From Dendrobates tinctorius (taxonomy: Eukaryota): DNA of 64,000 nucleotides. A model generated the notes under the pieces. That model saw only the letters and a program-made list of their open reading frames with translations. It had not been told where the DNA came from and did no database searches. Where the stretch lies: positions 7,316,001 through 7,380,000 of the forward strand of contig NW_027361804.1 in NCBI RefSeq assembly GCF_039654945.1. Reading direction: 5' to 3'. Made by a program: the position numbers and the translations under genes. Below, in pieces: positions 32,201 through 62,600 of this stretch (its first letter is position 1; every line of letters begins with the position of its first letter).

Positions 32201-35200
32201 CCACGGAGCTGATTTAATTAGAGACATATGATGCTTCACACCCAAGAACATCGGTCCTTCAGATGAAAGAGTAATCTGAGGGATCCCGACATGACAAAAA
32301 GCAGTTATGTTACAGTTGGGTTTACTTTCGCTGGCATTGTTAGACATCTTACTTCTTCCTTTGGTAGCCCCCCATCCTGCAGTCAGACAGCTGTCAGGTC
32401 CAAACTTTTCAGCTTCTTGCGGCAAACATATTACAGTCACGGAATCACCTTAAATAAGGGAGAGAGAAGTCTACAGAATGTCAAGCCTCATATAGGCAAT
32501 GTAATAAAACGTTGTCTGCAGTTATATGGATAATGTTCCCCCAGCTTGAATGGTGAAACGGCTTACTAATGCACCGACGCATTTCAAGCTCCCTGTGAAG
32601 GATGTGAGACAACTCTACTGAATTTATGATGGTAGCCATATTGGTTGTCAGTATAAAGCTATCCATTAAGGGTTTAGTGTATGAGGCAGACTCCCGACAT
32701 CCCTACCATTCAGGTACTTGGTAACTGTCCCGATTTAGCCCATAAAAATGTACCAAATTTGGCATTTAAAGTAATGGAACCAATATGTCTCAGTTCCATT
32801 TACTTGAATTGGACTAAACTGCTGTAAGATGCAGTACCAGGCAAAGCCACAATTCGACATGTCACTGTACCTGGGTGTAGGGAATGTGGTGCCAACTTAC
32901 ACCGTGGACCATTTATTCAGTTAATTTAGGGAGAGTGATTGGAGTCTAACCAACTCCGTTCAGGTATTGCTGGTCTACCATAAGGATAAGCCATCGATAT
33001 GATCGTCCTAGAAAAATCGCTTCTTACCCAAGAGAAGAGGAAACTCAAGCTCTAGTAGGCAGAGGTCGTAATCTGGAGGAACCAGGTCATTGTCGTACAG
33101 TTCGTGAATGTAGGATTTTCTTACTACGGCTTCTGTCCTGTTAGCAGAAGACCGGTCTACGTGTCCTAGGATCACTCTGTCTGACCCAACACTGCGAAAA
33201 GGAGGACAGCATTCATCATAACATGTATAGGACTTCACATGGACCCTTCAAAATGTACTGTTTAGTCAAATTTGCCCCAAAAACAACATAGAGGCAGTTT
33301 CCTTGCACAAGTGGCCATGGTTTTGGGTGGTCTTGAGAGTACCCATCACCCATGGTCGTTCCACTAAGATTGGGTCACCCCCACCCAGTTTCTCCTCCCT
33401 CACAAAACTTTTCAATCAGAACCATTTTTCTATTGAATGATGTAGAGAGAGGGGGGCTTCATAGATAATTTCCCCCCAAAAATTCCACTTTTGGGAAAGT
33501 TATTGACCCTATGGCACAGTCATAGGATATTTTTAATTCCTTTTAAAATTATCTTTACGTTGAGTTATAACGAGAACATTTACACAAAGTTGCAGTGCGC
33601 CGCAGTCAGCAACCATTTCTCATGGATGATTGTCGCCCCACAGAAAGAATCTCCCCATTGGTCCTCAAGGTTGGCAATCCAAGGCCAGGACCTGGGCAGA
33701 GCGTTCTGACCTCCCACAACTCGAGGAGTCCCTTTTTCATCTGTAACAACTTCAGTCATTGAAGCAGACTTGGTTTTTGGCATGGGATCTACAGAAGAGA
33801 CCCCACAGAGGTCTACAAAAAGAAATCAAAAACACGGTTGTTTTAAGGTCATGACTCACTGACTTTGGTGCCAAGCACTCATTAATATATTTGTGAAATA
33901 TAGGACATTATATGGTAGACTGAATTACCATAATCAACCGCAACCTCCACAGATCTCCATGTCTCCATGACGGAAGACCTATTTCTCTCACCGTAACGAA
34001 TATGGAAACCGCGACTACTCACAGAGTTGTCGGTGTGGAAGTGAAGAATTAGGAAGCCGCTTCTGGAGATGAAGACACGATTGGACTTATTTCCGCAAAG
34101 TGATACTAGGAGAAGAAAAGTAAACTAGATGGCATCCCCACAAGAGACAATGATATATTCGTTATCATTTACCAAAATATTTTATTTTTATATTAAGTAG
34201 ATTCAAAATTGCTCCCAGGATTATTTCCTAGAATAAAGATATAGACAAAATTACTCCATTTTTCTGACACCACGTACAAATTCCTTATAGAATTCTGTCT
34301 ACCTGCAGCCTCCACTAGGGGGAGCTAAATGCATACTGATAATCAATAGAACTCAATAGTAACCCAGTATGCAGTAAGCTCTTGAGCTCGCCTAGTGGTA
34401 GAACTTTATAATTTAGCAGAAGATTTGAAGCTTCATATCATGAGAAAGGAAAAATAATCTCTTCCCCTCTCACAACACTTTCAAAAACAATAAAGCTTAC
34501 CCAACAAGGTGGTATCATTACCGTCTCCATCATAAATACTTAAAAAATCCCATGTGCAGTTTGGAGAGTCCTCCAGTCCTAGGTCTACAATGTATAACGC
34601 AAGCTCATGCCCAGATTCAGAAGAAATGATCCAACGACAATCAAGTCCACTAAGGTAAGTCACCGGATACCCGGGTGATTTTAACTTGGATGTTCCAGCT
34701 CTTAAAACTTTCAGAACGGGGCAACCTGAAAAGGTAAAAATGATCAAAGAAGAAGAAAATATTTTAAAAAAAATCATATCGAAACACATGACAAGTAGTC
34801 AATATCTAAAATGCCTGACCAAGGTACTCAGATCTTGGAGAGGAGTGCACCAAAAATTGTGAAGTGGTATATTAAGACACCTAGCATGAAGGATTGAGTG
34901 AACTCTGAAATTCGAAAATTTAAATTTTTTCATTGAGAAAATTACTTACTGAGATTAGACAAATCCTCGCTGTGATTTATAGAATCTAAAAAAAGCAAAA
35001 ACATTATATATATTACTGGTTAACAAAGTTCCATCTCTGTTGACCTTCTACCCTCTTTGGGGGTCTTCTTTATAGATCTGTTAACTTTTTTTATATTGTG
35101 TAGGGTACGGCCACACGGTAACGGCTTTATATTGTGTAGCGTACGGCCACACGGTAACGGCTTTATATTGTGTAGCGTACGGCCACACGGTAACGGCTTT

Positions 35201-41200: not shown

Positions 41201-44200
41201 GATCAACATGGCCACCCTACACCCCCCAGAGGGGAGCCCCCCGATCTGCTCCATTACTATGTGTAATAACAAACATGGCCGCCCAACACCGCCCACAGGG
41301 GAGCCCACCTGCAATTTTTCGGGACCTACACTTTGCAGTGAGCAGCCGTCAGGGCCCATTGAGGCGATACGATGACTCCTCCGCACAGGAACGTGTCCTC
41401 GTACATCATGGCTACCTGCCACGGCCAACAGTTCGGGCAAGATTCCTCCCCTCCAACTATACGACTTAGAAGCCACTGGGGGGGCAGGGGCGCCACTCCG
41501 CAGACCCCTAAACACCAGCCGGACACAAGGGGGGACAAATCATGGCATTATATTAGAAACATTATGACCCCATCAGGGGACAAGAACAGCAAAACAATGG
41601 GGGGTGGGGATGGGAAATGGACCTGGACCAAGAAGCAATGGGGTCAATTTCTCGCCTATGTGAAGACCCTCTGACTCCTGATTTAGTGCCGGAGGCGTCT
41701 GAATGGATTTTTCATCTGTCTGTCCGTCTGCAAAATGTAACCGATCTGGAGGGAAATCCAAAACGAAAAAAAAAAAATCATGATTCTCATGTTCCCCCCA
41801 AGGTTGGTACAAAGCAAAATGATTTTCTTGGGTTACAAAAATAATTAGGGATTTCTTCCTCAAACAGCGCCACCCCATCGGAAGGTTGTGTCTGGCACTG
41901 CAGATTGGCTCAGCTAAAGTGAACGGGTCTCCTGCAGTAACCGACAACCTCTGGAAAAGAGTGGTGCTGTGTTCTGGAAAGAAGCAGGAAAGTTTCATAA
42001 CTACAAGATCTGACTACACACAGGGATTGTTTGTAGTCTGCTACCATGGAGACACATAGGATTGAGAGTTCATAAAACAGATTATTTATAAAATTAAAGA
42101 AATTAGCACAATTAGTTTTATTTTAGATGGAGGAGAAAAGAACTTAGCAAAAGTCTACACATCATGCACACCACATACCTGGATATACAAAGCTGAATCT
42201 CGCCTTAAAACCGGCATAATTTCCCTCGTGATCGCTTTGGAATTTAACGACCATAATGTTACTAGGACTGAAGACGTCACGATCCACCAGAAACCCACAT
42301 AAAGTAACTGGAAGGAGGGAGAAGAGTCAGAAAGACTAAAACCAGCAGCAGGAGGAGTGATGGCAGGAGGACCTCACTTCTGTCTGCAGGGAGCTCCCCC
42401 TAGTGGTGGCTGCAGAAAGGATCTTATCATGTATCTCTGTATACAGGGAGCTCCCCCTAGTGGTGGCTGCAGACAGGATCTTATCATGTATCTCTGTATA
42501 TAGGGAGCTCCCTCTAGTGGTTGCTGCATGCAGGATCTTATCATGTATCTCTGGGTACAGGGAGCTCCCCCTAGTGGTGGCTGCAGACAGGATCTTATCA
42601 TGTATCTCTGTATACAGGGAGCTTCCCCTAGTGGTGGCTGCAGACAGGATCTTATCATGTATCTCTGTATACAGGGAGCTTCCCCTAGTTGTGGCTGCAG
42701 ACAGGATCTTATCATGTATCTCTATACAGGGAGCTCCCCCTAGTGGTGGCTGCAGACAGGATCTTATGTATCTCTATATACAGGGAGTTCCCCCTAGTGG
42801 TGGCTGCAGACAGGATCTTATGTATCTCTATATACAGGGAGCTCCCTCTAGTGGTGGCTGCAGACAGGATCTTATCATGTATCTCTGTATACAGGGAGCT
42901 TCCCCTAGTGGTGGCTGCAGACAGGATCTTATGTATCTCTGTATACAGGGAGCTCCCCCTAGTGGTGGCTGCAGACAGGATCTTATGTATCTATATACAG
43001 GGAGTTCCCCCTAGTGGTGGCTGCAGACAGGATCTTATGTATCTCTATATACAGGGAGCTCCCTCTAGTGGTGGCTGCAGACAGGATCTTATCATGTATC
43101 TCTGTATACAGGGAGCTTCCCCTAGTGGTGGCTGCAGACAGGATCTTATGTATCTCTGTATACAGGGAGCTCCCCCTAGTGGTGGCTGCAGACAGGATCT
43201 TATGTATCTATATACAGGGAGTTCCCCCTAGTGGTGGCTGCAGACAGGATCTTATGTATCTCTATATACAGGGAGCTCCCCCTAGTGGTGGCTGCAGACA
43301 GGATCTTATCATGTATCTCTGTATACAGGGAGCTACCCCTAGTGGTGGCTGCAGACTGGATCTTCTGTATCTCTGTATACAGGGAGCTCCCCCTAGTGGT
43401 GGCTGCAGACAGGATCTTATCATGTATCTCTATATACAGGGAGTTCCCCCTAGTGGTGGCTGCAGACAGGATGTTATGTATCTGCTAATACCGATTAGGC
43501 GAGATTCCTCTCTGTCACTGTAAATTGAGACATGATCGTATTCACATCGTTTCTGATACTCCAGAGAAAAGTCTTCAAACACAATCTACAAAGGCAACAC
43601 AACAAGGTTATTACATCAGAGTCTGGTCTACAGATGTGGATACTGGGGTTAAGCTGCATTACCAGACACAGCCAGATAGACCTAAGTGGCGCTGTTTCTT
43701 GAAAATAAGATCACTGAACCCTAAATAACTCCTCTTATTGAATCCTTGATATTGGACCCAAAAGGGCTAATAGACATTAATACTATTAAATCTCTATAAG
43801 AGGTTGTTTACAATCGCTGTGGACCCAAGAAGCCATTTACCTGTATCATGCTCCCTTCTGGCGCTTCTATGACCCAGCGACAGGAAGTGTTACTTGGGTA
43901 CAACCCGGGATAATTAAGGGTGAAGATTTTGCCTTCCTCTCGTAGCTCTGCAGCGCTGCCGCACCCGGAGCCTGTACAACGACACAGAAGATCTCACGAC
44001 CCCGCGCCGGAGACGACACAGAATGGCCGTCCAATCACATCAGCACCCACCTTTCTTCGACGTAGGACATAACGTAGAAAACTCGAACTCAAAACCACGA
44101 CCACTGACGGAGCCGTCCGAGATGAAAGACACCGTGACATTACCGGAGCGGATTATCAGAGGCGATGGCAGGACGGATCCACACAACTTTCCTGAGAAAG

Positions 44201-47200
44201 GGCAGGAAATGTTTCACCCCCATCATTTCCATTGATTGTACTGTATATCAGAAAAGATTGTCGTATTCGACCATTCTATACATTCTCTATGTAAATCCAT
44301 TACAGTCACTACCTGCATCCAGCACAAGGGGGAGCTCACGGCACATAGTGAATCCTGTCTTCAGTGAGCTCCCCCTAGTGGTGACTACAAGCATCCAGAT
44401 ATTTATCATGTATCCAGATGGCTATGCAGGGGATTTGGAGCTCTGTATCAGAAAATGGAGCTGTAACCACTATATGAAGATGTGGGCTGTAACTCTGGGC
44501 AATTCATTTATAAATGGGATTTCTATTATAAAAAGTAACAAAATAATTTTCATGCATAAATATACTCACGGACTTCCTTCTGTTTGACAGTAAAAGTCAG
44601 CGAGTCGTGAGCGCAGGTCACATGATCCTCCAGGTCCAGTTTAATAAATCGGATCTTGATATTCGCAGATGAAATTATTGTCCATCGACATTGACTGCAA
44701 TGATGACAGATTTAAAGGGGCGGTGCACAGTGTTGATATGCATATAGTTTATACATGCTCTTTAAGGGTAGACAGAGATCAAGATAAAGCAGGGAACCAT
44801 TTACAGATAATCATCTATGACATAAGCAACATGTTGACTGTTTCCATGGAAGACATAATTCTACCACTAGGAGGCGGAGAGTTTGTAGAATGACAACACC
44901 AAAACCAATGTTACCTGTTGTTGGAATAATTGCTGTTAGCATCTAGAGGGTACTTGATGTAACCATTTTTGGCGACAATAGTCAGTGGTCTAGAACTGCA
45001 AATGCCTGTAAAACGCAAAATAGATAAGATTTTATCTAAGAAGAGAAGAATACACACAAATAATGGACAAAATAAGAAGCAGTACTGGTTATAACCACAG
45101 GTAGGGGCTATTCTACGTGCAAATCACTGCAAGAACATGGAGGGGGAGCTCCCTATATACAGAGATACATGATGAGAGCCTGTCTGCAGTCACCACTAGG
45201 GGGAGCTCCCTGTATACAGAGATACATGATGAGAGCCTGTCTGCAGCCACCACTAGGGGGAGCTCCCTGTATACAGAGATACATGATAAGATCCTTTCTG
45301 CAGCCACCACTAGGGGGAGCTCCCTGTACACAGAGATACATGATAAGATCCAGTCTGCAGCCACCACTAGGGGGAGCTCCCTGTATACACAGATACATGA
45401 TAAGATCCTGTCTGCATCCACCACTAGGGGGAGCTCCCTATATACAGAGATACATGATAAGATCCTGTCTGCAGCCACCACTAGGGGGAGCTCCCTGTAT
45501 ACAGAGATACATGATAAGATCCTGTCTGCAGCCACCACTAGGGGGAGCTCCCTGTATACAGAGACACATGATAAGATCCTGTCTGCAGCCACCACTAGGG
45601 GGAGCTCCCTATATACAGAGATACCTGATAAGATTCTGTCTTCAGCCACCACTAGGGGGAGCTCCCTGTATACACAGATACATGATAAGATCCTGTCTGC
45701 ATCCACCACTAGGGGGAGCTCCCTATATACAGAGATACATGATAAGATCCTGTCTGCAGCCACCACTAGGGGGAGCTCCCTGTATACAGAGATACATGAT
45801 AAGATCCTGTCTGCAGCCACCACTAGGGGGAGCTCCCTGTATACAGAGACACATGATAAGATCCTGTCTGCAGCCACCACTAGGGGGAGCTCCCTATATA
45901 CAGAGATACCTGATAAGATTCTGTCTTCAGCCACCACTAGGGGGAGCTCCCTGTATACAGAGATACATGATAAGATCCTGTCTTCAGCCACCACTAGGGG
46001 GAGCTCTGCATCAGGAAATGCTCCAACTTTTATAAAGCTATTACAGCAGTAATCAGCATAGAGTTTTGGGAATATTCAGACCGATACGATCATGTCAGAT
46101 GAGATGATGTCACTGCTTCCCTCCCCTTACCGATACACATTTCAGTCCCGCGTAGTCCTGGCTTATTTTTGGGCGACTTACTATCAGATGAGGAATTTCT
46201 GATGAAGTCCATAAGTGCAGACGTTCTGGAGTAAACGGCCGGAGACCCGAGAGCGGCTCCGTTAGTTATGAACGCTCCCCAAGCTCTTCCACAACCAGCG
46301 CCCCAGGACGTACTGCCGACCAAGACCCACGTACCGGACCGCCGCCTGCAAACTAGGGGTCCTCCAGAGTCACCCTGAGATAAATCACATGGCCAATTTA
46401 TAGCACAAGCCAATGTGTAAGAAGGACTGTTCATTTTTCTCCATTTCTGACACAAGGATTTCCCCTTTTTTTTTTTTTTTTACTTGGTTTCCCCCATGTG
46501 ACTTCCTGTTAATGTCCCCTTACTTCCTCTTTATGCGTGGGAGGGGCTTAAAACAAGTCTGTGCAGCATGGAGAGGCAGTGTATTGTATAACATATGAAC
46601 TAGAAGAAGAGAAATGAACAGAGGTGTGTCATACTAGAGCTCACACCCACGCAGTGCCATCTAGATAGCCCACCTGACAAGCGTCTCTGCTCCCATCTGG
46701 GAAGCCGGCACACAGCATTGACTCGTGGAGGGCTGGGAGCCCCATGGTGACGAGCGCAGACCTGCAAGTTTCGTCATCCAGTATGGGCAGGCTCACCTCC
46801 TGCAGGATGTTAGCGGGCTCCCCACCTGAAAATACGTCCAAGGCAAAGACATCTGTAACAGATTTGGGAGGGGCATAGTGATGTCCTTAAAGGGATTGTC
46901 CATCCACTTTAACAGAGCCAAGCTCTAATACCAAGCACCTCCATGGACAAGTGTGGCGTCATTTTATACCGAAATCAGCCATGTTTTTCTGATCCTGGAC
47001 AGCCCCTTAAGCTACAGGAAACCAACATGGCAGCCATATTGGTTGTGGCCAAACTATATATGTAAACTGGTAAACTTACTCTCGCTAACCCTTCCCCATC
47101 CGCTGGTCACACACAAGGTCCCCGGCTCAGTCTTCTCCCCCACTTGTGGTAAGCACACTGGCTGGACCCGAGACCCTGAGACAAGGAGCAGAAGGAATTT

Positions 47201-49805
47201 AAAGGTACAGTGCACTTTTGGGCCTCAGCTGAGAGTGATGCTATTTGCTATAAAGCTGACAACTCACAACCCTTTGCCTACGTTTTGACTGTTATTACCA
47301 AAGGCTGAGAAGTGGAGCAGCACCCAGGAGATCTACAATAGGAGCCTCCACGACACTCACCCAGGATGACCGGCCGCCGCAGATAGACCAGTGCGATGTC
47401 GTAACTCCTACTTCCATCGTGCTTGTACTCTGGATGCAGCTTCACCTCAGACACGGGGATTTCTTGCTGCTCAGGGTCCACGTTGCTCTGGTCGTACTCT
47501 CCAGCGACCACCAACAAGTGTTGGACTTTGTTACTGGAAATAAGAAATGATGGGAGTTGAATGTGGACATGATCTACAGGGCGACGGCACAGCCCGGCTA
47601 TGCTATCATTCTATAATGGAGGCATTGGGGCCGAGGAGGACGACCGCGTGTGGGCACTGGTAATGATGAGGGTGACTAAGGTGCTGATGGCCACCTAAAG
47701 GGACTATGAAAGTCGCATATAGGGACTAGGGTCTGGAGGATTATCATCCTATAGGAACTGGGGTAGATGACAATGATGGCCGCCTATAGAGGTAAAAGTT
47801 AATTGTGATGATGACCTCCTACATTTCCTGATGCAAATGATGGTCCTTTATGGGCCCAGAAGACCTCGACGGTCCCCTTTCGGGCCCAGAAGACCTCGAC
47901 GGTCCCCTTTCGGGCCCAGAAGACCTCGACGGTCCCCTTTCGGGCCCAGAAGACCTCGACGGTCCCCTTTCGGGCCCAGAAGACCTCGACGGTCCCCTTT
48001 CGGGCCCAGAAGACCTCGACGGTCCCCTTTCGGGCCCAGAAGACCTCGACGGTCCCCTTTCGGGCCCAGAAGACCTCGACGGTCCCCTTTCGGGCCCAGA
48101 AGTCTGTGGAGTCACCTTTGATCTCGACGTTTGCCTGATACTCACTTATCTGCAGGATACACACAGTGAGCGGCGGTCACCACCAGGTTTCTCTCTACAA
48201 TAGCTCCCCCGCAGATGTGTCTTTCATAAAACTTTATTGACACCTGGATAAGAAAACAACACAATATCTGATTTTCCACAGTTTCCTTTTTGTAGCTGAA
48301 ATGTTTATTGCATATTTCTTTAAAATTAGTTTTGATGCAGATTTGGCTGTGACTGGAGTGTAATGTGCTCATTTCCTACATATCATGGGAACACCCTTGT
48401 GTTTACTCTTACAGTCCAAGGCTGTCCACCAATCGGGGCGTCCGCTCCCCCGACGATACGCGAGCTCGCTTGTATCAGGTTTACCATTTTCCTCAAGGGT
48501 GGAATGCCGCACTTCATCCCTGGGAAGAATAAGTAGTAAAAAAAAAAAAGCACTTAAGGGTGTGAGTACTTATGCAACATTATAATTGCTCCAAAGTGAG
48601 TAAAATCTTTAAAAAAAAAAAAAAAAAAATTTGCAAACAGCCATAATAAGATATTCCCTAATGTTTTCTGCATGTAGCTCCTGTACAGACCAATGTTTCC
48701 ATCAGTCTCCACAACGCGCAGGGATTGTTTTCTGTCCCCAGACAACTATAATCTGCACAGGAGCTGCATACACAAAACGGTCCAATCTATGAAATTATAC
48801 AGCTAGTTCACCTGCAGGGTAAATGTAACAAGAAAGGCACGGGGGAAAAAAAAAAAGGGAGCCTCAAATTATTATTTTTTTTTTTTGGTCCTCTAGCGTT
48901 TCCCAAAAGATTGAATAAAAAGTGATATAAACAACGTAGGTAGACNNNNNNNNNNNNNNNNNNNNNNNNNNNNNNNNNNNNNNNNNNNNNNNNNNNNNNN
49001 NNNNNNNNNNNNNNNNNNNNNNNNNNNNNNNNNNNNNNNNNNNNNNNNNNNNNNNNNNNNNNNNNNNNNNNNNNNNNNNNNNTTTCGCCGCCTCCTGCTT
49101 CTGCAGGGACCACGGAGCGTCCTGCACCGGATCCAGGTAGGTGAATATAATTGAGTTAATTACTTTTATCATATCTCTGGGAAAAGATTTATTATACCCC
49201 AAAAATCTCTTTAAGGGGTTAACGGTGTCGGCAATATCATTAGTCCTAAACAAAGAGGCAGTCCCTGCATGTGTTGTGGCTGTTGACCATTTTTTTCGAG
49301 CACGCCGAAAATACTCGTTTAAGACATGAGCGACCTAATCGAAGCACGCTCGCTCATCGCTAGCGGTAATTCATACCTTCCTCCATCAGGGGGCACCACT
49401 TGAAAATACAGCAGAATTTACCATTGCCCCTTAGATGGGCACCGGCCCGTTGCCCCTTACCCAACTAGTATACAAAAATTAGAAACCATCTGACCTGCGG
49501 TTCTTGGCGATCCGGACCATCTCTTTGCTATGACCGGAGAGGACGGGGATACATCTGTGATACCTGCACATAACACCAGGATATATATATATATATATAT
49601 ACACACACACTATACCGTACACACAGACCCGATCGCCACCCATTGAGGAGGCCTGAGGGTCCCACCACAAGGTGAAGAAGGGTTAACTCAAAGTGTAAAC
49701 TTCTAACCTACAAACTAGGAATCCTGGAAGATAAATACAGAAAGACCCCTAGGTCTCACCCGAGGACAGACGTAGGACCAGTAATAACCAGACACACAGA
49801 GCCAT
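17086..49805 (-). CDS. ovch1: Ovochymase polyprotease (signal peptide, protease1, CUB1-2, protease2, CUB3-5, protease3), ~32 exons
   Basis: Exons with AG/GT and consistent phase: 49760-49805, 49100-(gap), 48146-48243, 47361-47533, 47080-47175, 46674-46825, 46182-46374, 44915-45005, 44570-44694, 44051-44191, 43841-43971, 43492-43585, 42179-42307, 41330-41507, 40970-41042, 40686-40881, 39267-39412, 39026-39182, 38869-38949, 38467-38694, 38115-38255, 37889-38021, 37300-37439, 36938-37072, 34950-34985, 34501-34725, 33992-34105, 33584-33812, 33028-33191, 32353-32448, 22933-23066, 17086-17241. Three TAAHC/DxDxxL/GDSGGP triads; architecture matches Xenopus pro-ovochymase. Confidence 0.9.
17546..22425 (+). 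repeat. 32-bp minisatellite (~150 copies) GGATGGGGGACATTATACAAGGAAAAGGCCAT in the last ovch1 intron
   Basis: Direct periodicity; variant units with an extra GGATGGGGGACAT; followed by a hAT-like end ...CTAGTCATGCCACTG at ~22562. Confidence 0.97.
22933..23066 (-). CDS. ovch1: ovch1 penultimate exon
   Basis: [44 protein letters not shown] with AG/GT boundaries. Confidence 0.88.
24160..24958. mobile_element. Solo LTR (Gypsy/BEL-like, ~800 bp); its final base lies at 32296, after the ERV
   Basis: TGTCACAA...TTGTGAC[ERV]TGACA; 5-bp TSD AAAAG at 24155-59 and 32297-301; three internal ~50-bp repeats at 24735-24875. Confidence 0.75.
24959..25351 (+). repeat. ERV 5' LTR (393 bp)
   Basis: TGATAGG...CCCGACA; TATAAAA at 25171; no difference seen versus the 3' LTR. 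Confidence 0.95.
25358..25376 (+). promoter_or_regulatory. Primer-binding site, tRNA-Lys(UUU)-type
   Basis: TGGCGCCCGAAACAGGGAC versus canonical TGGCGCCCGAACAGGGAC (one extra A). Confidence 0.85.
26035..26184 (+). CDS. Small pre-gag ORF, 49 aa, single predicted TM helix
   Basis: [49 protein letters not shown]. Confidence 0.4.
   Translation: MTEEPRQMDTLFTILCVVGVFLFGCYIAYKYTKHVVHRGTDTPFSLLAP
26299..28245 (+). pseudogene. gag: ERV gag, disrupted
   Basis: MGNSQG myristoylation-type start at 26299; capsid-like segments [32 protein letters not shown]; stops and frameshifts. Confidence 0.75.
28246..30119 (+). pseudogene. pol: ERV pol remnant: RT tether, RNase H and integrase; PR and RT polymerase deleted
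   Basis: LNPATLLP; [19 protein letters not shown]; HHCC (H.PNH...CLIC); QID / ESDRGTHF / SGKVERMNG; GPY; several frameshifts. Confidence 0.9.
30129..31638 (+). CDS. env: ERV env (gamma-type), one frameshift after the signal peptide; 464-aa open body
   Basis: Signal [16 protein letters not shown] at 30129 is in a different frame; CWIC; LYKR cleavage-like site; [15 protein letters not shown]; CX6CC; TM helix. Confidence 0.85.
31888..31898 (+). promoter_or_regulatory. Polypurine tract
   Basis: AAAGGGGGGAA directly before the 3' LTR. Confidence 0.85.
31899..32291 (+). repeat. ERV 3' LTR (393 bp)
   Basis: Copy of the 5' LTR, followed by TSD TGAC. Confidence 0.95.
32353..33812 (-). CDS. ovch1: ovch1 protease domain 3, N-terminal exons
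   Basis: PRVVGG...SWPW...TAAHC; DYDLCLL; ICLP...AGWG. Confidence 0.9.
33992..38949 (-). CDS. ovch1: ovch1 linker and CUB3-CUB5 exons
   Basis: SPGFPYGY...CSWII; SPGYP.NEYP..; CEWRIIAP; SPGYPVTY...CRWII...CTWDFL. Confidence 0.85.
34295..34402. mobile_element. Palindromic MITE remnant carrying CCACTAGGGGGAGCT motifs
   Basis: CCACTAGGGGGAGCT ... AGCTCGCCTAGTGG inverted pair; similar copy at 44310-44395. Confidence 0.55.
35090..36780 (+). repeat. 36-bp minisatellite (~47 copies; 26-bp variant) TATATTGTGTAGGGTACGGCCACACGGTAACGGCTT
   Basis: Direct periodicity, very homogeneous. Confidence 0.97.
39026..41507 (-). CDS. ovch1: ovch1 protease domain 2 exons (trypsin-like)
   Basis: SRIVGG...WPWQ...TAAHC; DYDLAL; KDACQ|GDSGGPLVC; GVYTRV. 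Confidence 0.9.
39855..40340. mobile_element. Probable solo LTR
   Basis: TGTGACA...TGTGACA ends; flanks AACAC/AATAC (4/5 TSD). Confidence 0.45.
41080..41310 (+). repeat. ~65-bp tandem repeat x3
   Basis: CCCCCGATCTGCTCCATTACTATGTATAGTGATCAACATGGCCACCCTACACC units. Confidence 0.8.
42179..45005 (-). CDS. ovch1: ovch1 CUB1 and CUB2 exons
   Basis: YSNNS|QCRWTI; K.CGS...[11 protein letters not shown]; [11 protein letters not shown]; CEYDHV; F.SD..GN..GF. Confidence 0.85.
42385..43480 (-). repeat. 57-bp minisatellite (~19 copies) with CTCF-like motif, reverse orientation
   Basis: CAGGGAGCTCCCCCTAGTGGTGGCTGCAGACAGGATCTTATCATGTATCTCTGTATA; 54-bp and 52-bp variants. Confidence 0.95.
45140..46008 (+). 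repeat. 57-bp minisatellite (~15 copies) with CTCF-like motif, forward orientation
   Basis: Reverse complement of the 42385-43480 unit: CTGCAGCCACCACTAGGGGGAGCTCCCTGTATACAGAGATACATGATAAGATCCTGT. Confidence 0.95.
46182..48243 (-). CDS. ovch1: ovch1 protease domain 1 exons (trypsin-like, S1 Asp)
   Basis: HICGG...TAAHC; SYDIALV; DACQ|GDSGGPLVC. Confidence 0.9.
47852..48102 (+). repeat. 30-bp perfect tandem repeat x8 GGGCCCAGAAGACCTCGACGGTCCCCTTTC
   Basis: Direct periodicity. Confidence 0.95.
48946..49082. other. N-gap (137 nt) covering most of ovch1 exon 2
   Basis: Run of n; exon 2 begins at 49100 (EAGGGE...) and runs into it. Confidence 0.95.
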
Positions 49806-49967
49806 GGACTCCACAGCCAGAAGTCCTCCAGGAACCAGCGGAGCCTCCAGGATAATCAGCCGCTCGGTCCATGGAGATTGCAGACAGGTGGAGAAGTCCA
49901 AACCAAGGAGCGGAACCCAGGGATGAAGCAAGGTCCAGTCCGGAAAATGTGTCATACTCAACGTCTG

Positions 49968-49998
49968 CCAGTAGGGGGCGTCGTGGAGAGCGATATAT
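49968..49998. promoter_or_regulatory. Putative ovch1 promoter elements: CTCF-like CCAGTAGGGGGCG and TATA-like TATATA
   Basis: ~165-190 nt upstream of the signal-peptide ATG (49805). Confidence 0.35.
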
Positions 49999-50740: not shown

Positions 50741-52549
50741 CTAGACATGATGGAGGCCTCATACACATCCTGATACAACTGTTAGATAGTGGGACTCCTA
50801 GACTGGTAAAGCCTACGCACTAAGTGCAAGGGTCGAAAACATTTACCCCTGGTGGAGTATACATATATACAGTATCTGTAAGAGAATTGTTAAGGTAGGC
50901 CTCATACACACCCTGGAAAATAAGTGAGGGTCGAGTGTTTACCTTCTAAAAATTTTGAGCGAGGGCCTAAGGGCGGAGTCAGATTAAACGTATGCAAAAT
51001 CGGTCTGAGCCTGGGAAATCTGATGCAATTTCCAGTCAGCAGGAAAATGTGTGCATGTTTGTTGCAAGCTATGGGCCATGGGGTGCATTATACTGTATAG
51101 GCCATGGGGTGCATTATACTGTATGGACTATGGGGTGCATTATACTGTATGGGCCATGGGGTTCATTATACTGTATGGGCCATGGGGTGCATTATACTGT
51201 ATGGACTATGGGGCGCATTATACTGTATGGGCCATGGGGTGCATTATACTGTATGGGCCATGGGGTGCATTATACTGTATGGACTATGGGGTGCATTATA
51301 CTGTATGGGCCATGGGGTGCATTATACTGTATGGACTATGGGGTGCATTATACTGTATGGACTATGGGGTACATTATACTGTATGGGCCATGGGGTGCAT
51401 TATACTGTATGGGCCATGGGGTGCATTATACTGTATGGACTATGGGGCGCATTATACTGTATGGGCCATGGGGTGCATTATACTGTATGGGCCATGGGGT
51501 GCATCATACTGTATGGGCCATGGGGTGCATCATACTGTATGGGCCATGGGGTGCATTATACTGTATGGGTCATGGGGTGCATTATACTGTATGGACTATG
51601 GGGTGCATTATACTGTATGGGCCATGGGGTGCATTATACTGTATGGGCCATGGGGTGCATTATACTATATGGACTATGGGGTGCATTATACTGTATGGGC
51701 CATGGGGTGCATTATACTGTATGGGCCATAGGGTGCATTATACTGTATGGGCCATGGGGTGCATTATACTGTATGGACTATGGGGTGCATTATACTGTAT
51801 GGGCCATGGGGTGCATTATACTGTATGGGCCATGGGGTGCATTATACTGTATGGACTATGGGGTGCATTATACTGTATGGTCCATGGGGTGCATTATACT
51901 GTATGGGTCATGGGGTGCATTATACTGTATGGGTCATGGGGTGCATTATACTGTATGGGTCATGGGGTGCATTATACTGTATGGACTATGGGGTGCATTA
52001 TACTGTATGGGCCATGGGGTGCATTATACTGTATGGGCCATGGGGTGCATTATACTGTACGGGTCATGGGGTGCATTATACTGTATGCGCCATGGGGTGC
52101 ATTATACTGTATGGGCCATGGGGTGCATTATACTGTATGGACTATGGGGTGCATTATACTGTATGGGCCATGGGGTGCATTATACTGTATGGGTCATGGG
52201 GTGCATTCTAAAGTATGGTCCATGGGGTGCATTATACTGTATAGACTATGGGGTGCATTATACTGTATGGGCTATGGGGTGCATTATAATGTACGGGCCA
52301 TGGGGTGCATTATACTGTATGGACTATGGGGTGTATTATATTGTATGGACTATGGGGTGCATTATACTGTATGGGCCATGGGGTGCATTATACTGTATGG
52401 GCTATGGGGTGCATTATACTGTATGGACTATGGGGTGCATTATACTGTATGGTCTATGAGGTGCATTATACTTTATGGAGGACTGTGGGGTGCACTATAC
52501 TGCATCGGTTATGGGGTGCATTATACTGCATGGGATATGGGGTGCATTA

Positions 52550-53770
52550 CACTCACTGGCCACTTTATTAGGTACACCTGTCCAACTGTGTGTTAAGACT
52601 TAATTTCTAATCAGCCAATCACATGGCGGCAACTCAGTGCATTTAGGCATGTAGACATGGTCAAGACAATCTCCTGCAGTTCAAACCGAGCATCAGTATG
52701 GGGAAGAAAGGTGATTTGAGTGCCTTTGAACGTGGCATGATTGTTGGTGCCAGAAGGGCTGGTCTGAGAATTTCAGAAACTGCTGATCTACTGGGATTTT
52801 CACGCACAACCATCTCTAGGGTTTACAGAGAATGGTCCGAAAAAGAAAAAAAATCCAGTGAGCGGCAGTTCTGTGGCCGGAAATGCCATGTTGATGCCAG
52901 AGGTCAGAGGAGAATGGGCAGACTGGTTCGAGCTGATAGAAAGGCAACAGTGACTCAAATTGCCACCCGTTACAACCAAGGTAGGCAGAAGAGCATCTCT
53001 GAACGCACAGTGCGTCGAACTTTGAGGCAGATGGGCTACAGCAGCAGAAGACCACACTGGGTACCACTCCTCTCAGCTAAGAACAGGAAACTGAGGCTAC
53101 AATTTGCACAAGCTCATCGAAATTGGACAGTAGAAGATTGGAAAAACGTTGCCTGGTCTGATGAGTCTCGATTTCTGCTGCGACATTCGGATGGTAGGGT
53201 CAGAATTTGGCGTAAACAACATGAAAGCATGGATCCATCCTGCCTTGTATCAACGGTTCAGGCTGGTGGTGGTGGTGTCATGGTGTGGGGAATTTTTTCT
53301 GGGCACTCTTTCGGCCCCTTGGTACCAATTGAGCATCGTTGCAACGCCACAGCCTACCTGAGTATTGTTGCTGACCATGTCCATCCCTTTATGACCACAA
53401 TGTACCCAACATCTGATGGCTACTTTCAGCAGGATAATGCGCCATGTCATAAAGCTCGAATCATCTCAGATTGGTTTCTTGAACATGACAATGAGTTTAC
53501 TGTACTCAAATGGCCTCCTCAGTCACCAGATCTCAATCCAATAGAGCATCTTTGGGATGTGGTGGAACGGGAGATTCGCATCAGGGATGTGCAGCCAACA
53601 AATCTGCGCCAACTGTGTGATGCCATCATGTCAATATGGTCCAAAATCTCTGAGGAATGCTTCCAGCACCTTGTTGAATCTCTGCCACGAAGAATTGAGG
53701 CAGTTCTGAAGGCAAAAGGGGGTCCAACCCCTTACTAGCATGGTGTACCTAATAAAGTGGCCAGTGAGTG
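52550..53770 (+). mobile_element. Full-length Tc1/mariner DD36E (Incomer-type) transposon, 1221 bp
   Basis: Perfect 29-bp TIRs CACTCACTGGCCACTTTATTAGGTACACC; TA TSD at 52548-49 and 53771-72. Confidence 0.95.
52698..53738 (+). CDS. Intact DD36E transposase, 346 aa
   Basis: HTH N-terminus; [19 protein letters not shown]; 36 residues between the second D and E. Confidence 0.93.
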
Positions 53771-55841
53771 TATACTGTATGGACAATGAGGTGGATTATA
53801 CTGCATGGGCTATGCGGTGCATTGTATTATATGGGTTATGTGGTGCATTATACTGTATGGAAAAAGGGGTGCATTATACTGTATGGGCCATGGGGTGCAT
53901 TATAAAGTATGGCCCATGGGGTGCATTTTACTGTATAGACTATGGGGTGCATTAGACTGTATGGGCCATGGGGTGCATTATACTGTATGGGCCATGGGGT
54001 GCATTATACTGTATGGACTATGGGGTGCATTATACTGTATGGGCCATCGGGTGCATTATACTGTATGGGCCATGTGGTGCATTATACTGTATGGGCCATG
54101 GGGCGCATTATACTGTATAGGCTATGGGGTGCATTATACTGTATAGACTATGGGGTGCATTATACTGTATGGGCCATGGGGTGCATTATACTCTATGGGC
54201 CATGGGGTGCATTATACTGTATGGGCCATGGGGTGCATTATACTATATAGACTATGGGGTGCATTATATTGTATGGACTATGGGGTGCATTATACTGTAT
54301 GGGCCATGGGGTGCATTATACTGTATGGGCTATGGGGTGCATTATACTGTATGGACTATGGGGTGCATTATACTGTATGGACAATGAGGTGGATTATACT
54401 GCATGGGCTATGCGGTGCATTGTATTATATGGGTTATGTGGTGCATTATACTGTATGGAAAAAGGGGTGCATTATACTGTATGGGCCATGGGGTGCATTA
54501 TAAAGTATGGCCCATGGGGTGCATTTTACTGTATAGACTATGGGGTGCATTAGACTGTATGGGCCATGGGGTGCATTATACTGTATGGGCCATGGGGTGC
54601 ATTATACTGTATGGACTATGGGGTGCATTATACTGTATGGGCCATCGGGTGCATTATACTGTATGGGCCATGGGGTGCATTATACTGTATGGGCCATGGG
54701 GCGCATTATACTGTATAGGCTATGGGGTGCATTATACTGTATAGACTATGGGGTGCATTATACTGTATGGGCCATGGGGTGCATTATACTCTATGGGCCA
54801 TGGGGTGCATTATACTGTATGGGCCATGGGGTGCATTATACTATATAGACTATGGGGTGCATTATATTGTATGGACTATGGGGTGCATTATACTGTATGG
54901 GCCATGGGGTGCATTATACTGTATGGGCTATGGGGTGCATTATACTGTATGGACTATGGGGTGCATTATACTGTATGGTCTATGAGGTGCATTATACTTT
55001 ATGGAGGACTGTGGGGTGCATTATACTGCATCGGTTATGGGGTGCATTATACTGCATGGGCTATGGGGTGCATTATACTGTATGGACAATGAGGTGGATT
55101 ATACTGCATGGGCTATGGGGTGCATTATACTGTATGGACAATGAGGTGGATTATACTGCATGGGCTATGGGGTGCATTGTATTATATGGGTTATGTGGTG
55201 CATTATACTGTATGGGCTATGGGATGCATTATACAATATGGGTTATGTGGTGCATTATACTTTATGGACTATGGGGTGCATTATACTGTATGGACTATGG
55301 GATGCATTATACTTTATGGATTATGGGATGCATTATACTGTAAAAACTAAGTGGTGAATTATACTGTATGGATTATGGAGTGCATTATACTATATGGACT
55401 GTGGGGTGCATTATGCTGTATGTAGGACTATGTGGGGGTTATTATAATATTTGGAGGGCTGTTTGGGAGCCTTTAAACTGTATGTAAGCAATTGTACAGT
55501 GTGAAGGTTTGTGTGGGGTCCATTATACTGTGTGGAAGGCTGTGAAGGGGATACTATACAGTGTAGGACCATTATATTGTGTTTAGGCCCATTATACTGC
55601 ATGGAGGGCTGTGTAGCGGTCACAGTTGGGGGATCATACTGTGTTGGAGTCATCATACTTTTTTGGGGCAGTTTACGGTGGGGTACCGTAGGGTCATCAT
55701 ACTGAGCGTGTAGAGGAATTCACTGTGGATGTATCTTAGTGTTTGTGGGGCACTTTTATTGACATCATACTTTGAGTGCAATGAAAGGAAAATCTAGGGC
55801 TCCAGTAGGAGGAATATTAGACAGCACACAGTACCACACAG

Positions 55842-59649: not shown

Positions 59650-62600
59650 AGGGGGCAGTATTATAGTAGTTATATTCTTGTACATAGGGGCAGTATTATA
59701 GTAGCTATATTCTTGTACAAAAGGAGCAGCATTATAGTAGTTATATTCTTGCACATAGGGGCAGTATTATAGTAGTTATATTCCTGTACATAGGGGCAGT
59801 ATTATAGTAGTTATATTCTTGTACATAGGGGACAGTATTATAGTAGTTATATTCTTGCACATAGGGGCAGTATTATAGTAGTTATATTCTTGTACATAGG
59901 AGCAGTATTATAGTAGTTATATTCTTGCACATAGGAGCAGTATAGTAGTTATATTCTTGTACATAGGGGGCAGTATTATAGTAGTTATATACTTGCACAT
60001 AGGGGCAGTATTATAGTAGTTATATTCCTGTACATAAGGGCAGTTTTATAGTAGTTATATTCTTGTACATAGGAGCAGTATTATAGTAGCTATATTCTTG
60101 TACATAGGAGCAGTATTATAGTAGCTATATTCTTGTACAAAAGAAGCAGTATTATAGTAGTTATATTCTTGCACATAGGGGCAGTATTATAGTAGTTATA
60201 TTCTTGTACATAGGAGCAGTATTATAGTAGTTATATTCCTGTACATAAGGGCAGTTTTATAGTAGTTATATTCTTGTACATAGAGGCAGAATTATAGTAG
60301 TTATATTCTTGTACAAAGGGAGCAGTATTATAGTAGTTATATTCCTGTACATAAGGGCAGTTTTATAGTAGTTATATTCTTGTACATAGGAGCAGTATTA
60401 TAGTAGTTATATTCTTGTACATAGGGGGCAGTATTATAGTAGTTATATTCTTGTACATGGGGGCAGTATTATAGTAGTTATATTCTTGTACATAGGGGCC
60501 GTATTATAGTAGTTATATTCTTGTACATAGGGGCAGTATTATAGTAGTTATATTCTTGTACATAGGGGCAGTATTATAGTAGTTATATTCTTGTACATAG
60601 GGGCAGTATTATAGTAGTTATATTCTTGTGCATAGGGGCAGTATTATAGTAGTTATATTCTTGCGCATAGGGGCAGTATTATAGTAGTTATATTCTTGTA
60701 CAGAGGAGGCAGTATTATAGTAGCTATATTCTTGTACATAGGAGCAGTAATATAGTAGTTATATTCTTGTACATAGGGGCAGTATTATAGTAGTTATATT
60801 CTTGTATATAGGAGCAGTATTATAGTAGTTATATTCTTGCACATAGGAGCAGTATTATAGTAGTTATATTCTTGTACATAGAGGCAGTACTATAGTAGTT
60901 ATATTCTTGTACATAGAGGCAGTATTATAGTAGTTATATTCTTGTACATAGGGGCAGTATTATAGTAGTTATATTCTTGTACAAAGGGAGCAGTATTATA
61001 GTAGTTATATTCTTGTACATAGGGGCAGTATTATAGTAGCTATATTCTTGTATATAGGGGCAGTATTATAGTAGTTATATTCTTGTACAGAGGAGCAGTA
61101 TTATTGTAGTTATATTCTTGTACATAAGGACAGTATTATAGTAGTTATATTCTTGTACAGAGGAGCAGTATTATAGTAGTTATATTCTTGCACATAGGAG
61201 CAGTATTATAGTAGTTATATTCTTGTACATAGGGGCAGTATTATAGTAGTTATATTCTTGTACATAGGGAGCCGTATTATAGTAGTTATATTCTTGTACA
61301 TAGCAGCAGTATTATAGTATATATTCTTGTACATAGGAGCAGTATTATAATAGTTATATTCTTGTATATAGGGGCAGTTTTATAGTAGTTATATTCTTGT
61401 ACATAGGGGGCAGTATTATAGTAGTTATATTCTTGTACATAGGGACAGTATTATAGTAGTTATATTCTTGTACATAGGAACAGTATTATAGTAGTTATAT
61501 TCCTGTACATAGGGAGCAGTATTATAGTAGTTATATTCTTGTACATAGGAGCAGTATTATAGTAGTTATATTGTTGTACATAGGAGTAGTTATATTCTTG
61601 TACATAGGGGGCAGTATTATAGTAGTTATATTCTTGTACATAGGGGGCAGTATTATAGTAGTTATATTCCTGTACATAGGGAGCAGTATTATAGTAGTTA
61701 TATTCTTGTACATAGGGAACAGTATTATAGTAGTTATTGTTGTACATAGGAGTAGTTATATTCTTGTACATAGGGAGCAGTATTATAGTAGTTATATTCT
61801 TGTATATAGCGGCAGTATTATAGTAGCTATATTTTTGCACATAGGAGCAGTATTATAGTAGTTATATTCTTGTACATAGGGGGCAGTATTATAGTAGTTT
61901 AATACTGCTCCCTATGTACAAGAATTGAACTACTATAATACTGCTCCCTATGTACAAGAATATAACTACTATAATTCTGCCCCCTCTGTACAAGAATATA
62001 ACTACTATAATTCTGCCCCCTATGTACAAGAATATAACTACTACAGTCATATGTTAAAGTTTGGGCACCCCTATTAATGTTAACCTTTTTTCTTTATAAC
62101 AATTTTGGTTTTTGTAACAGCTATTTCAGTTTCATATATCTAATAACTGATGGACTCAGTTATATTTCTGGATTCAAATGAGGTTTATTGTACTAACAGA
62201 AAATGTGCAATCTGCATTTAAACAAAATTTGACCGGTGCAAAAGTATGGGCACCCTTATCATTTTCTTGATTTGAACACTCCTAACTACTTTTTACTGAC
62301 TTCCTGAAGCACTAAATTGGTTTTGTAACCTCATTGAGCTTTGAACTTCATAGCCAGGTGTATCAAATCATGAGAAAAGGAATTTAAGGTGGCCACTTGC
62401 AAGTAGTTCTCCTATTTGATTCTCCTATGAAGAGTGGCATCATGGGCTCCTCAAAACAACTCTCAAATGATCTGAAAACAAAGATTATTCAACATAGCTT
62501 TTCAGGGGAAGGATACAAAAAGTTGTCTCAGAGATTTAACCTGTCAGTTTCCACTGTGGGGAACATAGTAAGGAAATGGAAGAACACAGGTACAGTTCTT

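What the first reader, a model, noticed from the sequence alone, without database searches (positions are those of the whole stretch)
42385..46008. Two divergently oriented tandem arrays of CTCF-like sites (~34 motifs) inside ovch1: candidate MITE-derived insulator cluster
Seen: every 57-bp unit contains CCACCACTAGGGGGAGCTC. The left array (~19 units) has it on the minus strand and the right array (~15 units) on the plus strand, so they point away from each other. Single palindromic copies at 34295-34402 and 44310-44395 look like the source MITE. Further CTCF-like sites occur at ~44863 (CCACTAGGAGGCGG) and 49968 (CCAGTAGGGGGCG). Established: the CTCF core is CCAC(C/T)AG(G/A)GGGCGC, and divergent CTCF clusters mark loop/TAD boundaries. 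Inference: transposon-seeded minisatellites may build copy-number-tunable insulators in this frog genome.
Basis: partly seen in the sequence, partly recalled or inferred. Interest (0 to 1): 0.72.

Follow-up and report, generated by a model that had tools for sequence, protein, structure and literature searches.

The report
Transposon-derived intron minisatellites with CTCF-like motifs
Two mirror-image tandem repeats that almost fill two introns of a frog protease gene are recent expansions of one arm of a very abundant small transposon. Each copy looks like a strong docking site for the genome-folding protein CTCF, but nothing yet shows that CTCF binds there or that the locus insulates anything.

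Summary
The left array (42379-43491) has 20 units with the motif on the minus strand. The right array (45141-46006) has 15 units with it on the plus strand. Both share one 57-bp consensus and point away from each other.

It also matches 14 of 16 bases of a published canonical site. Both arrays contain no CpG.

MITE origin is supported. The unit equals one terminal inverted repeat plus the loop-side sequence of a fold-back element.

The context is ordinary:
- The unit family is extremely abundant, roughly 1e5 unit copies in three related species.
- The 64-kb window holds over a dozen other minisatellite families, some also in inverted pairs.
- Each array almost fills one intron of a minus-strand ovochymase-type gene.
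- 100%-identical 217-bp and 285-bp higher-order duplications show recent unequal crossing-over.
- Motif conservation is weak; 11 of 20 left units carry a motif substitution.

RNA contigs splice the five bracketed exons linearly. CTCF occupancy and insulation could not be tested. The scan has noted at least five other "CTCF arrays" in this genome, on other DNA.

Verdict: a real, neutral-looking transposon-derived minisatellite pair with predicted but unproven CTCF competence.

The parts
42379..43491 (-). Left 57-bp minisatellite: 20 units of 57, 54 or 52 bp with a 217-bp higher-order repeat. The CTCF-like motif is on the minus strand (reverse orientation). It fills 94% of the 1184-nt intron 42308-43491. 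It has no CpG.
45141..46006 (+). Right 57-bp minisatellite: 15 units, all 57 bp, with a 285-bp (5-unit) higher-order repeat duplicated at 100% identity. The CTCF-like motif is on the plus strand (forward orientation). It fills 77% of the 1125-nt intron 45006-46130. It has no CpG.
44305..44460 (.). Old fold-back copy of the source MITE family. The motif arms lie at 44319(+) and 44366(-). The right side continues as a diverged version of about 1.3 array units. It sits in the intron between two CUB exons.
   Evidence: (depth 400-900 against 6-10 for unique DNA)
34290..34405 (.). Second old fold-back copy of the same MITE family. Its left-arm motif scores 19.96 bits and its right arm is degenerate. 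It lies next to a CUB exon.
44861..44879 (+). Single CTCF-like site outside the repeat family, 18.0 bits, in an intron.
49965..49983 (+). Single CTCF-like site outside the repeat family, 20.3 bits. A further one lies at 49380-49398(+), 17.2 bits.
44915..45005 (-). Exon A of the bracketed block (start of CUB domain 1), 91 nt.
   Evidence: spliced RNA contigs
44569..44694 (-). Exon B (middle of CUB 1), 126 nt.
44050..44190 (-). Exon C (end of CUB 1), 141 nt.
43841..43970 (-). Exon D (start of CUB 2), 130 nt.
43492..43585 (-). Exon E (middle of CUB 2), 94 nt. Its splice donor GT (43491-43490) and the next dozen or so intron bases are array-unit-derived sequence.
42165..42307 (-). Exon F (end of CUB 2). 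Its acceptor lies 71 nt beyond the outer edge of the left array. The low end of this range is the limit of the open frame, not a mapped donor.
   Evidence: boundary read from the sequence

Best explanation
These are two independently expanded minisatellites, each born from a separate insertion of a very abundant fold-back MITE-like element. The insertions sit in two introns of a minus-strand ovochymase-type protease gene.

The 57-bp unit is one terminal inverted repeat of the element, which contains the CTCF-like 19-mer, plus the adjacent loop-side sequence. Duplication most likely began by slippage or unequal exchange between the short GAGCTC repeats that bracket this segment. It continued by unequal crossing-over of multi-unit blocks. 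That growth is still recent, because the 217-bp and 285-bp blocks are duplicated at 100% identity.

The CTCF-like motif is inherited from the transposon end, not built at this locus. The opposite orientation of the two arrays reflects two insertions in opposite orientation. That outcome has a one-in-four chance for the divergent arrangement.

Shown here: anatomy, origin, abundance, recency, and linear splicing of the bracketed exons.

Inferred: the arrays are selectively neutral intron filler. The units would probably bind CTCF in vitro, since the core match is strong, CpG-free and has one tolerated mismatch. A dedicated insulator role at this locus is unlikely.
For: - Both arrays have the same 57-bp consensus.
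- The unit aligns to one arm of the fold-back copies at 34290-34405 and 44305-44460, and both copies fold as hairpins.
- Contigs from other loci show the form 'motif(+), 29-38 nt loop, motif(-)' (table 5c).
- The outer end of the left array keeps a remnant of the opposite terminus.
- Summed contig depth over the array edges is 5e5 to 1.1e6, against 6-10 for flanking unique DNA, in two related species. Thousands of contigs run on into different flanks.
- 285/285 and 217/217 identical higher-order copies exist.
- The window holds more than a dozen other minisatellite families, including other inverted pairs at 59652-62043 and 63692-64000.
- Bredeson et al. (10.1101/2021.10.18.464293) describe transposon-fragment minisatellites expanded by unequal crossing-over as a general feature of frog genomes.
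- 11 of 20 left-array units carry a motif substitution. Variable columns in motif versus rest are 5/19 against 14/38 on the left (p=0.56).
- RNA contigs from the same species and a related one include all five exons in linear order.
Against: - The PWM score is high (p about 1e-7), and 33 of 35 units stay below p=2e-6.
- The arrays have zero CpG, so methylation cannot block binding.
- In the right array the motif is invariant while 12 of 38 other columns vary (p=0.04; pooled p=0.047). This could reflect constraint, although higher-order duplication makes the columns non-independent.
- At least one unit sits at the same intron position in species about 2% and 5-8% diverged.
- The non-repeat CTCF-like sites to the right of the left array (44861, 49380, 49965) are all forward, which is compatible with a boundary.
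- In zebrafish, non-autonomous DNA transposons are enriched at real CTCF sites (PMC7182764).
Confidence: 0.6

Rival explanations
1. The arrays are bound by CTCF along their length and, being divergent, stall cohesin arriving from either side. That would form a strong boundary inside the gene whose strength scales with copy number.
For: - The motif match is strong and agrees at 14 of 16 bases with a canonical site.
- The motif has no CpG.
- The orientation is divergent.
- Frog domain borders use oriented CTCF motifs (PMC8270788).
- Non-autonomous DNA transposons carry CTCF sites in zebrafish.
- Tandem arrays that bind CTCF are known, namely DXZ4 and ICCE.
- The motif is invariant in the right array.
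Against: - There are no occupancy or contact data.
- The family has roughly 1e5 units genome-wide, so most copies cannot each be a boundary.
- The left-array motif decays as fast as the rest of the unit.
- A 57-bp spacing leaves almost no room between footprints.
- Orientation alone has a one-in-four chance.
- The scan has flagged at least five other 'CTCF arrays' in this genome, which suggests a look-elsewhere effect.
Confidence: 0.12
2. CTCF binds a sizeable fraction of units of this family genome-wide, so the MITE has spread CTCF sites as SINE B2 did in rodents. This particular locus would still have no special architectural role.
For: The motif evidence is the same as above. The family is very abundant and shared by at least three related species. 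There are precedents in mammals and zebrafish.
Against: Untested. Dense tandem repeats are often packed in silent chromatin. The C-to-A change at core position 12 lowers the score by about 3 bits.
Confidence: 0.2
3. The effect is at the RNA level. In the pre-mRNA the two arrays are about 93% complementary over hundreds of nucleotides and bracket five exons totalling 582 nt, which is in frame. Their pairing could promote back-splicing into a circular RNA, skipping of the block, or ADAR editing.
For: - The inverted arms are 348 nt at 94% complementarity.
- The arrays fill the two flanking introns, and the exon lengths 91+126+141+130+94 sum to 582.
Against: RNA contigs of two species show only the linear joins 45005..43492 with all five exons. 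No back-splice or block-skipping joint appears among the joints listed, although contigs drop rare forms and 73 joints were not shown.
Confidence: 0.08

Closest known systems
Transposon-fragment minisatellites of frog genomes (Bredeson et al., X. tropicalis v10; 10.1101/2021.10.18.464293 / PMC10794172)
   Same: Both are tandem arrays of tens of base pairs derived from part of a transposable element and expanded by unequal crossing-over. Both occur in a genome where tandem arrays are a large fraction of the sequence.
   Different: The host is a poison-frog-type genome. The source is a fold-back MITE arm, not a SINE/tRNA-V, CR1 or Kolobok fragment. This 57-mer was not found in that paper's supplementary text. 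The chromosomal position of the window is unknown.
Transposon-borne CTCF sites (SINE B2 and others in mammals; non-autonomous DNA transposons in zebrafish, PMC7182764)
   Same: A mobile element carries a strong CTCF core motif and spreads it to very many loci.
   Different: Binding is demonstrated by ChIP in those cases and is only predicted here. Here the motif sits in the terminal inverted repeat and is further multiplied in tandem.
CTCF-binding tandem repeats DXZ4, ICCE and FIRRE on the mammalian X (PMC3218863, PMC3491370, PMC6125249)
   Same: These are head-to-tail arrays with one co-oriented CTCF motif per unit, variable in copy number.
   Different: Those units are kilobases long, single-locus, bound in an allele-specific way and shown to anchor superloops. 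Here the units are 57 bp, the family is dispersed in roughly 1e5 copies, and binding is untested.
Inverted intronic repeats that drive exon circularisation (e.g. inverted Alu pairs; own knowledge)
   Same: Long reverse-complementary sequences lie in the two introns flanking an exon block.
   Different: No back-splice product was seen here. The arms are minisatellite arrays, not single SINEs.

Membership tests
Vertebrate CTCF binding site | Match to the core motif | tested here: met
It is identical at 14 of 16 bases, including the first 11, to the canonical site quoted in PMC5694663.
Vertebrate CTCF binding site | Occupancy by CTCF in vivo or binding in vitro | not testable with these tools
   No ChIP or CUT&Tag run could be identified. 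The single run search returned only coded DNA and RNA runs.
Vertebrate CTCF binding site | Purifying selection on motif positions relative to the flanks | tested here: inconclusive
   Variable columns, motif versus rest: left array 5/19 against 14/38 (p=0.56); right array 1/19 against 12/38 (p=0.04); pooled p=0.047. Columns are not independent because of higher-order duplication.
Insulator or domain boundary built of divergent CTCF clusters | Reverse motifs upstream and forward motifs downstream | tested here: met
   20 reverse motifs at 42391-43459 and 15 forward motifs at 45190-46006. The chance of this arrangement is one in four.
Insulator or domain boundary built of divergent CTCF clusters | Cohesin stalling and a contact-insulation minimum at the site | not testable with these tools
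   No Hi-C or Rad21 data were accessible.
MITE (non-autonomous DNA transposon) | Terminal inverted repeats, small size, no coding capacity | tested here: met
   Both single copies are fold-backs. Hairpin forms with 29-38 nt loops occur at other loci (table 5c). See also alignment A1.
MITE (non-autonomous DNA transposon) | Many dispersed copies with unrelated flanks | tested here: met
   The copy at 44315-44497 has summed depth 400-900 against 6-10 for unique DNA, with loose ends diverging into AT-rich flanks.
MITE (non-autonomous DNA transposon) | Target-site duplication and a related autonomous element (superfamily assignment) | tested here: inconclusive
   The termini could be placed only approximately from the loose-end consensus. 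No clean target-site duplication is visible in the two old copies. No repeat library was available.
Transposon-derived minisatellite | Head-to-tail units homologous to part of a transposable element, with signs of unequal crossing-over | tested here: met
   The 217-bp and 285-bp blocks are duplicated at 100% identity.
circRNA-forming inverted intronic repeats | Back-splice junction in RNA | tested here: inconclusive
   Only linear joins are listed for the two RNA contig sets. Contigs drop rare forms.

The most novel reading that the evidence does not exclude
A fold-back MITE specific to the poison-frog lineage has scattered roughly 1e5 strong, CpG-free (and so methylation-proof) CTCF motifs, many in 57-bp-period arrays, and a substantial share are bound. 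That would be a transposon-driven CTCF wave outside mammals. It would offer natural allelic series of site number and orientation, with this divergent pair acting as a measurable boundary inside the ovochymase-type gene.
Probability: 0.12. Interest if true: 0.7.

Novelty: new member of a known kind. Interest (0 to 1): 0.35.

Why it matters
If bound, this repeat family alone would supply about as many CTCF motifs as a typical vertebrate genome uses. Its arrays would be natural experiments on how site number, spacing and orientation set boundary strength. As it stands, the locus is a clear worked example of how a transposon end turns into a minisatellite, and of why a strong motif match in a repeat-rich genome is not evidence of function. 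It also shows that introns almost wholly made of such arrays, with one array reaching the splice donor, are still spliced normally.

Tried and rejected
- Searched the supplementary text of Bredeson et al. for the monomer. No hit.
- Searched the paper library for the motif strings. One string returned only papers using canonical CTCF sites. The string with the A variant returned nothing relevant.
- Found no paper on dendrobatid satellites or on this 57-mer.
- Searched the scan's findings by sequence. The result was blank.
- Considered that the two arrays are one inverted duplication. Rejected, because the flanks beyond the arrays are unrelated and conserved exons lie between them.
- Considered one palindromic MITE with both arms expanded. 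Rejected for the same reason, and because that would give convergent orientation, not divergent.
- Considered strong specific transcription of the family. Rejected. In the same-species RNA run the ratio of array depth to intron depth (about 3.5e4) is below the DNA ratio of array to unique depth (7e4 to 1.2e5), so background or nascent coverage explains it.
Only about 80 nt of each inner edge was included.
- The exons were searched one by one by reference.
- Orthology to ovch1 versus ovch2 was not tested, because the exon-sized queries cannot reach full-length proteins under the length filter.
Full report
**Observation**

Tandem Repeats Finder reports a 57-bp array at 42379-43477 (19.9 copies, 92% matches; a 217-bp period extends it to 43491). 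It reports a second at 45141-46006 (15.2 copies, 94%).

It also occurs at 34309(+), 44319(+) and 44366(-). That is 38 hits against 0.01 expected from shuffles. The two arrays are reverse complements of each other, with 348-nt arms at 94%.

Split into units, both arrays give exactly the same 57-bp consensus. The right array has only 57-bp units. The left array mixes 57-, 54- and 52-bp units, and 11 of its 20 units carry a substitution inside the motif.

**Is the motif CTCF-like?**

I scanned the window with the JASPAR MA0139.1 count matrix.

- The consensus unit scores 20.2 of a possible 27.8 bits, p about 1e-7.
- 33 of 35 units stay below p=2e-6.
- The window has 57 hits at p<1e-4 against 12.8 expected, almost all of the excess coming from this family.
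- None of the dozen or more other minisatellite families in the window gives array-wide hits at p<1e-4. One array-edge hit of 10.65 bits lies at 59642.

Independently, Zuo et al. quote a 16-base canonical site (PMC5694663). The unit agrees with it at 14 of 16 positions, including the first 11.

Both arrays contain no CpG at all (0 in 1113 and 0 in 866 bases, against 48 in the 1649 bases between them). Cytosine methylation therefore could not block binding.

The extra sites at 44861 (18.0 bits) and 49965 (20.3 bits) are real. Further sites lie at 49380(+) and 4571(-).

Reverse motifs upstream and forward motifs downstream is the divergent arrangement expected at a boundary under the convergent-loop rule. 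Niu et al. found that rule to hold in a frog (PMC8270788).

**Gene context**

Open frames on the minus strand hit Pfam in this order:

| Domain | Coordinates |
|---|---|
| Trypsin | 48375-46093 |
| CUB | 45005-44050 |
| CUB | 43970-42165 |
| Trypsin | 41547-39021 |
| CUB | from 34798 |
| Trypsin | 33825 onward and 17259-17089 |

This is an ovochymase-type polyprotease. I did not test orthology to ovch1 against ovch2.

RNA contigs define five exons between the arrays: 44915-45005, 44569-44694, 44050-44190, 43841-43970 and 43492-43585. They come from a run of the same species (X6, no differences from the window) and from a related species (X17, one 3980-nt contig). They carry CT..AC ends, meaning GT..AG on the minus strand, and are joined in linear order. 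Their lengths sum to 582 nt.

Read from the sequence, the upstream exon ends at 46131 and the downstream exon starts at 42307. The right array therefore occupies 77% of a 1125-nt intron, and the left array 94% of a 1184-nt intron. The last, degenerate unit of the left array runs right up to exon E and supplies the intronic part of its splice donor (43478-43491).

**What the unit is**

The single copies at 34290-34405 and 44305-44395 fold as hairpins (z -3.4 and -4.7). In alignment A1 the array unit aligns with one arm of these copies, from one GAGCTC to the next. That segment covers the terminal inverted repeat, which holds the motif, plus the loop-side sequence.

Contigs laid on the array edges include many of the form 'forward motif, 29-38 other letters, reverse motif'. 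This is the hairpin element at other loci (table 5c). Loose-end consensus sequences show the family continuing for about 18 bases beyond the motif and then diverging into AT-rich flanks, which marks the element's terminus (table 7).

The outer end of the left array still carries a remnant of the opposite terminus. I could not define a target-site duplication or a superfamily.

**Abundance and species range**

The run search found the stretch in the probable source sample, in another sample of the same species, and in four other coded organisms. I laid only 43400-45220, leaving the long arrays out as the tool requires.

| Measure | X5 (B, DNA) | X6 (A, RNA) | X10 (D, DNA) | X17 (D, RNA) |
|---|---|---|---|---|
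| Summed contig depth, array-edge bins | about 5e5 | 3.5e5 | 1.1e6 | 3e4 |
| Unique sequence depth | 6-10 | n/a | 6-10 | n/a |

Thousands of contigs were laid. The tool warns that this is not a copy number. As an order of magnitude it points to about 1e5 unit copies per genome.

The fold-back copy at 44315-44497 has depth 400-900. In the RNA run of the same species, the array-to-intron depth ratio is lower than the array-to-unique ratio in DNA, so there is no sign of special expression.

Orthologous unique sequence differs by about 2% in organism B and 5-8% in organism D. A contig of B runs from exon E into the left array (43446-43883). A contig of D runs from the intron into the right array (44426-45220). 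At least one unit therefore sits at these positions in related species.

**Dynamics**

A 285-bp block of five units is duplicated at 285/285 identity in the right array. A 217-bp block of four units is duplicated at 217/217 in the left array, with exact runs of 317 and 291 bases. This is recent unequal crossing-over.

The window contains more than a dozen other minisatellite families, and one of them also forms inverted array pairs (59652-61899 against 61900-62043; 63692-63789 against 63788-64000). Bredeson et al. report that 10.67% of the X. tropicalis chromosomes lies in tandem arrays. They also report that many arrays derive from pieces of transposable elements expanded by unequal crossing-over.

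**Selection on the motif**

Variable columns inside the 19-mer against the other 38 columns are 5/19 against 14/38 in the left array (p=0.56) and 1/19 against 12/38 in the right array (p=0.04). Pooled, p=0.047. Because higher-order blocks were copied wholesale, the columns are not independent. I read this as weak at best.

**Interpretation**

The best-supported account has three steps:
1. Two separate insertions of an abundant fold-back MITE landed in opposite orientation in two introns.
2. Each then expanded by slippage between the GAGCTC microrepeats.
3. Each later grew by unequal crossing-over.

The CTCF-like motif came with the transposon end. The units would probably bind CTCF in vitro. 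Whether they do in chromatin is unknown.

With roughly 1e5 such motifs in the genome, a one-in-four chance of the divergent arrangement, and at least five other 'CTCF arrays' already flagged by the scan in this genome on other DNA, the case for a selected insulator at this locus is weak. My probabilities are:

| Reading | Probability |
|---|---|
| Neutral filler | 0.6 |
| Family-wide CTCF binding without a special local role | 0.2 |
| Locus-specific boundary | 0.12 |

On the RNA-level reading, I confirmed the exon arithmetic but saw only linear splicing.

**Comparison with known systems**

- Transposon-borne CTCF sites are well documented in mammals. In zebrafish they involve non-autonomous DNA transposons (PMC7182764).
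- Tandem arrays that bind CTCF are known from DXZ4 and ICCE.
- Transposon-fragment minisatellites are a described feature of frog genomes.

This locus combines the three. It adds no demonstrated new mechanism, so I rate it as a new member of a known kind.

**Limits**

- The PWM was recalled from memory.
- Organism names were coded. The poison-frog identity comes only from other notes of the scan.
- Array lengths in other species cannot be read from short-read contigs.
- No occupancy or contact data could be examined.

Noticed in passing
window 43478-43492: The splice donor of exon E (GT at 43491-43490) and the following dozen or so intron bases align in register with the array unit, with about 3 mismatches in 14. 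Transposon-derived repeat sequence therefore supplies the intronic half of a used 5' splice site. RNA contigs of two species splice there normally.
   Followed up: partly
window 42379-43491 and 45141-46006: Both arrays contain no CpG dinucleotide at all, in 1113 and 866 bases at about 50% G+C. The 1649 bases between them hold 48.
   Followed up: yes
window 59652-62043 and 63692-64000: A different 35-bp minisatellite family also occurs as directly abutting inverted array pairs. Mirror-image arrays are therefore a recurrent structural pattern in this region, not a peculiarity of the 57-mer.
   Followed up: no
window 51070-52553 and 53771-55422: Two large arrays (57 and 63 copies) of the same 26-bp unit lie in direct orientation, about 1.2 kb apart.
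   Followed up: no
window 47852-48102: A 30-bp unit is repeated 8.4 times at 100% identity, only about 45 nt from the open frame that holds the TAAHC active-site exon of the first trypsin domain. This looks like a very young expansion.
   Followed up: no
window 4903-5081 and 12967-13413: The same 30-bp unit (reading as a Ser/Pro/His-rich peptide repeat in some frames) forms arrays at two places 8 kb apart. The second lies inside the stretch another note calls a TRIM paralog.
   Followed up: no
window 17546-22371: A 32-bp minisatellite of about 4.8 kb (well over 100 copies, with 79- and 96-bp higher-order periods) is the largest array in the window. It lies within the span of the third trypsin domain's exons.
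   Followed up: no
window 48946-49082: A run of 137 N (assembly gap or mask) lies inside the gene. It was left untouched.
   Followed up: no
window 4571-4589, 44861-44879, 49380-49398, 49965-49983: Four strong CTCF-like sites lie outside the repeat family (17-20 bits), against about 0.1 expected at p<1e-6. The one to the left of the arrays is reverse and the three to the right of the left array are forward. That is too few to test, but compatible with an orientation switch near the arrays.
   Followed up: partly
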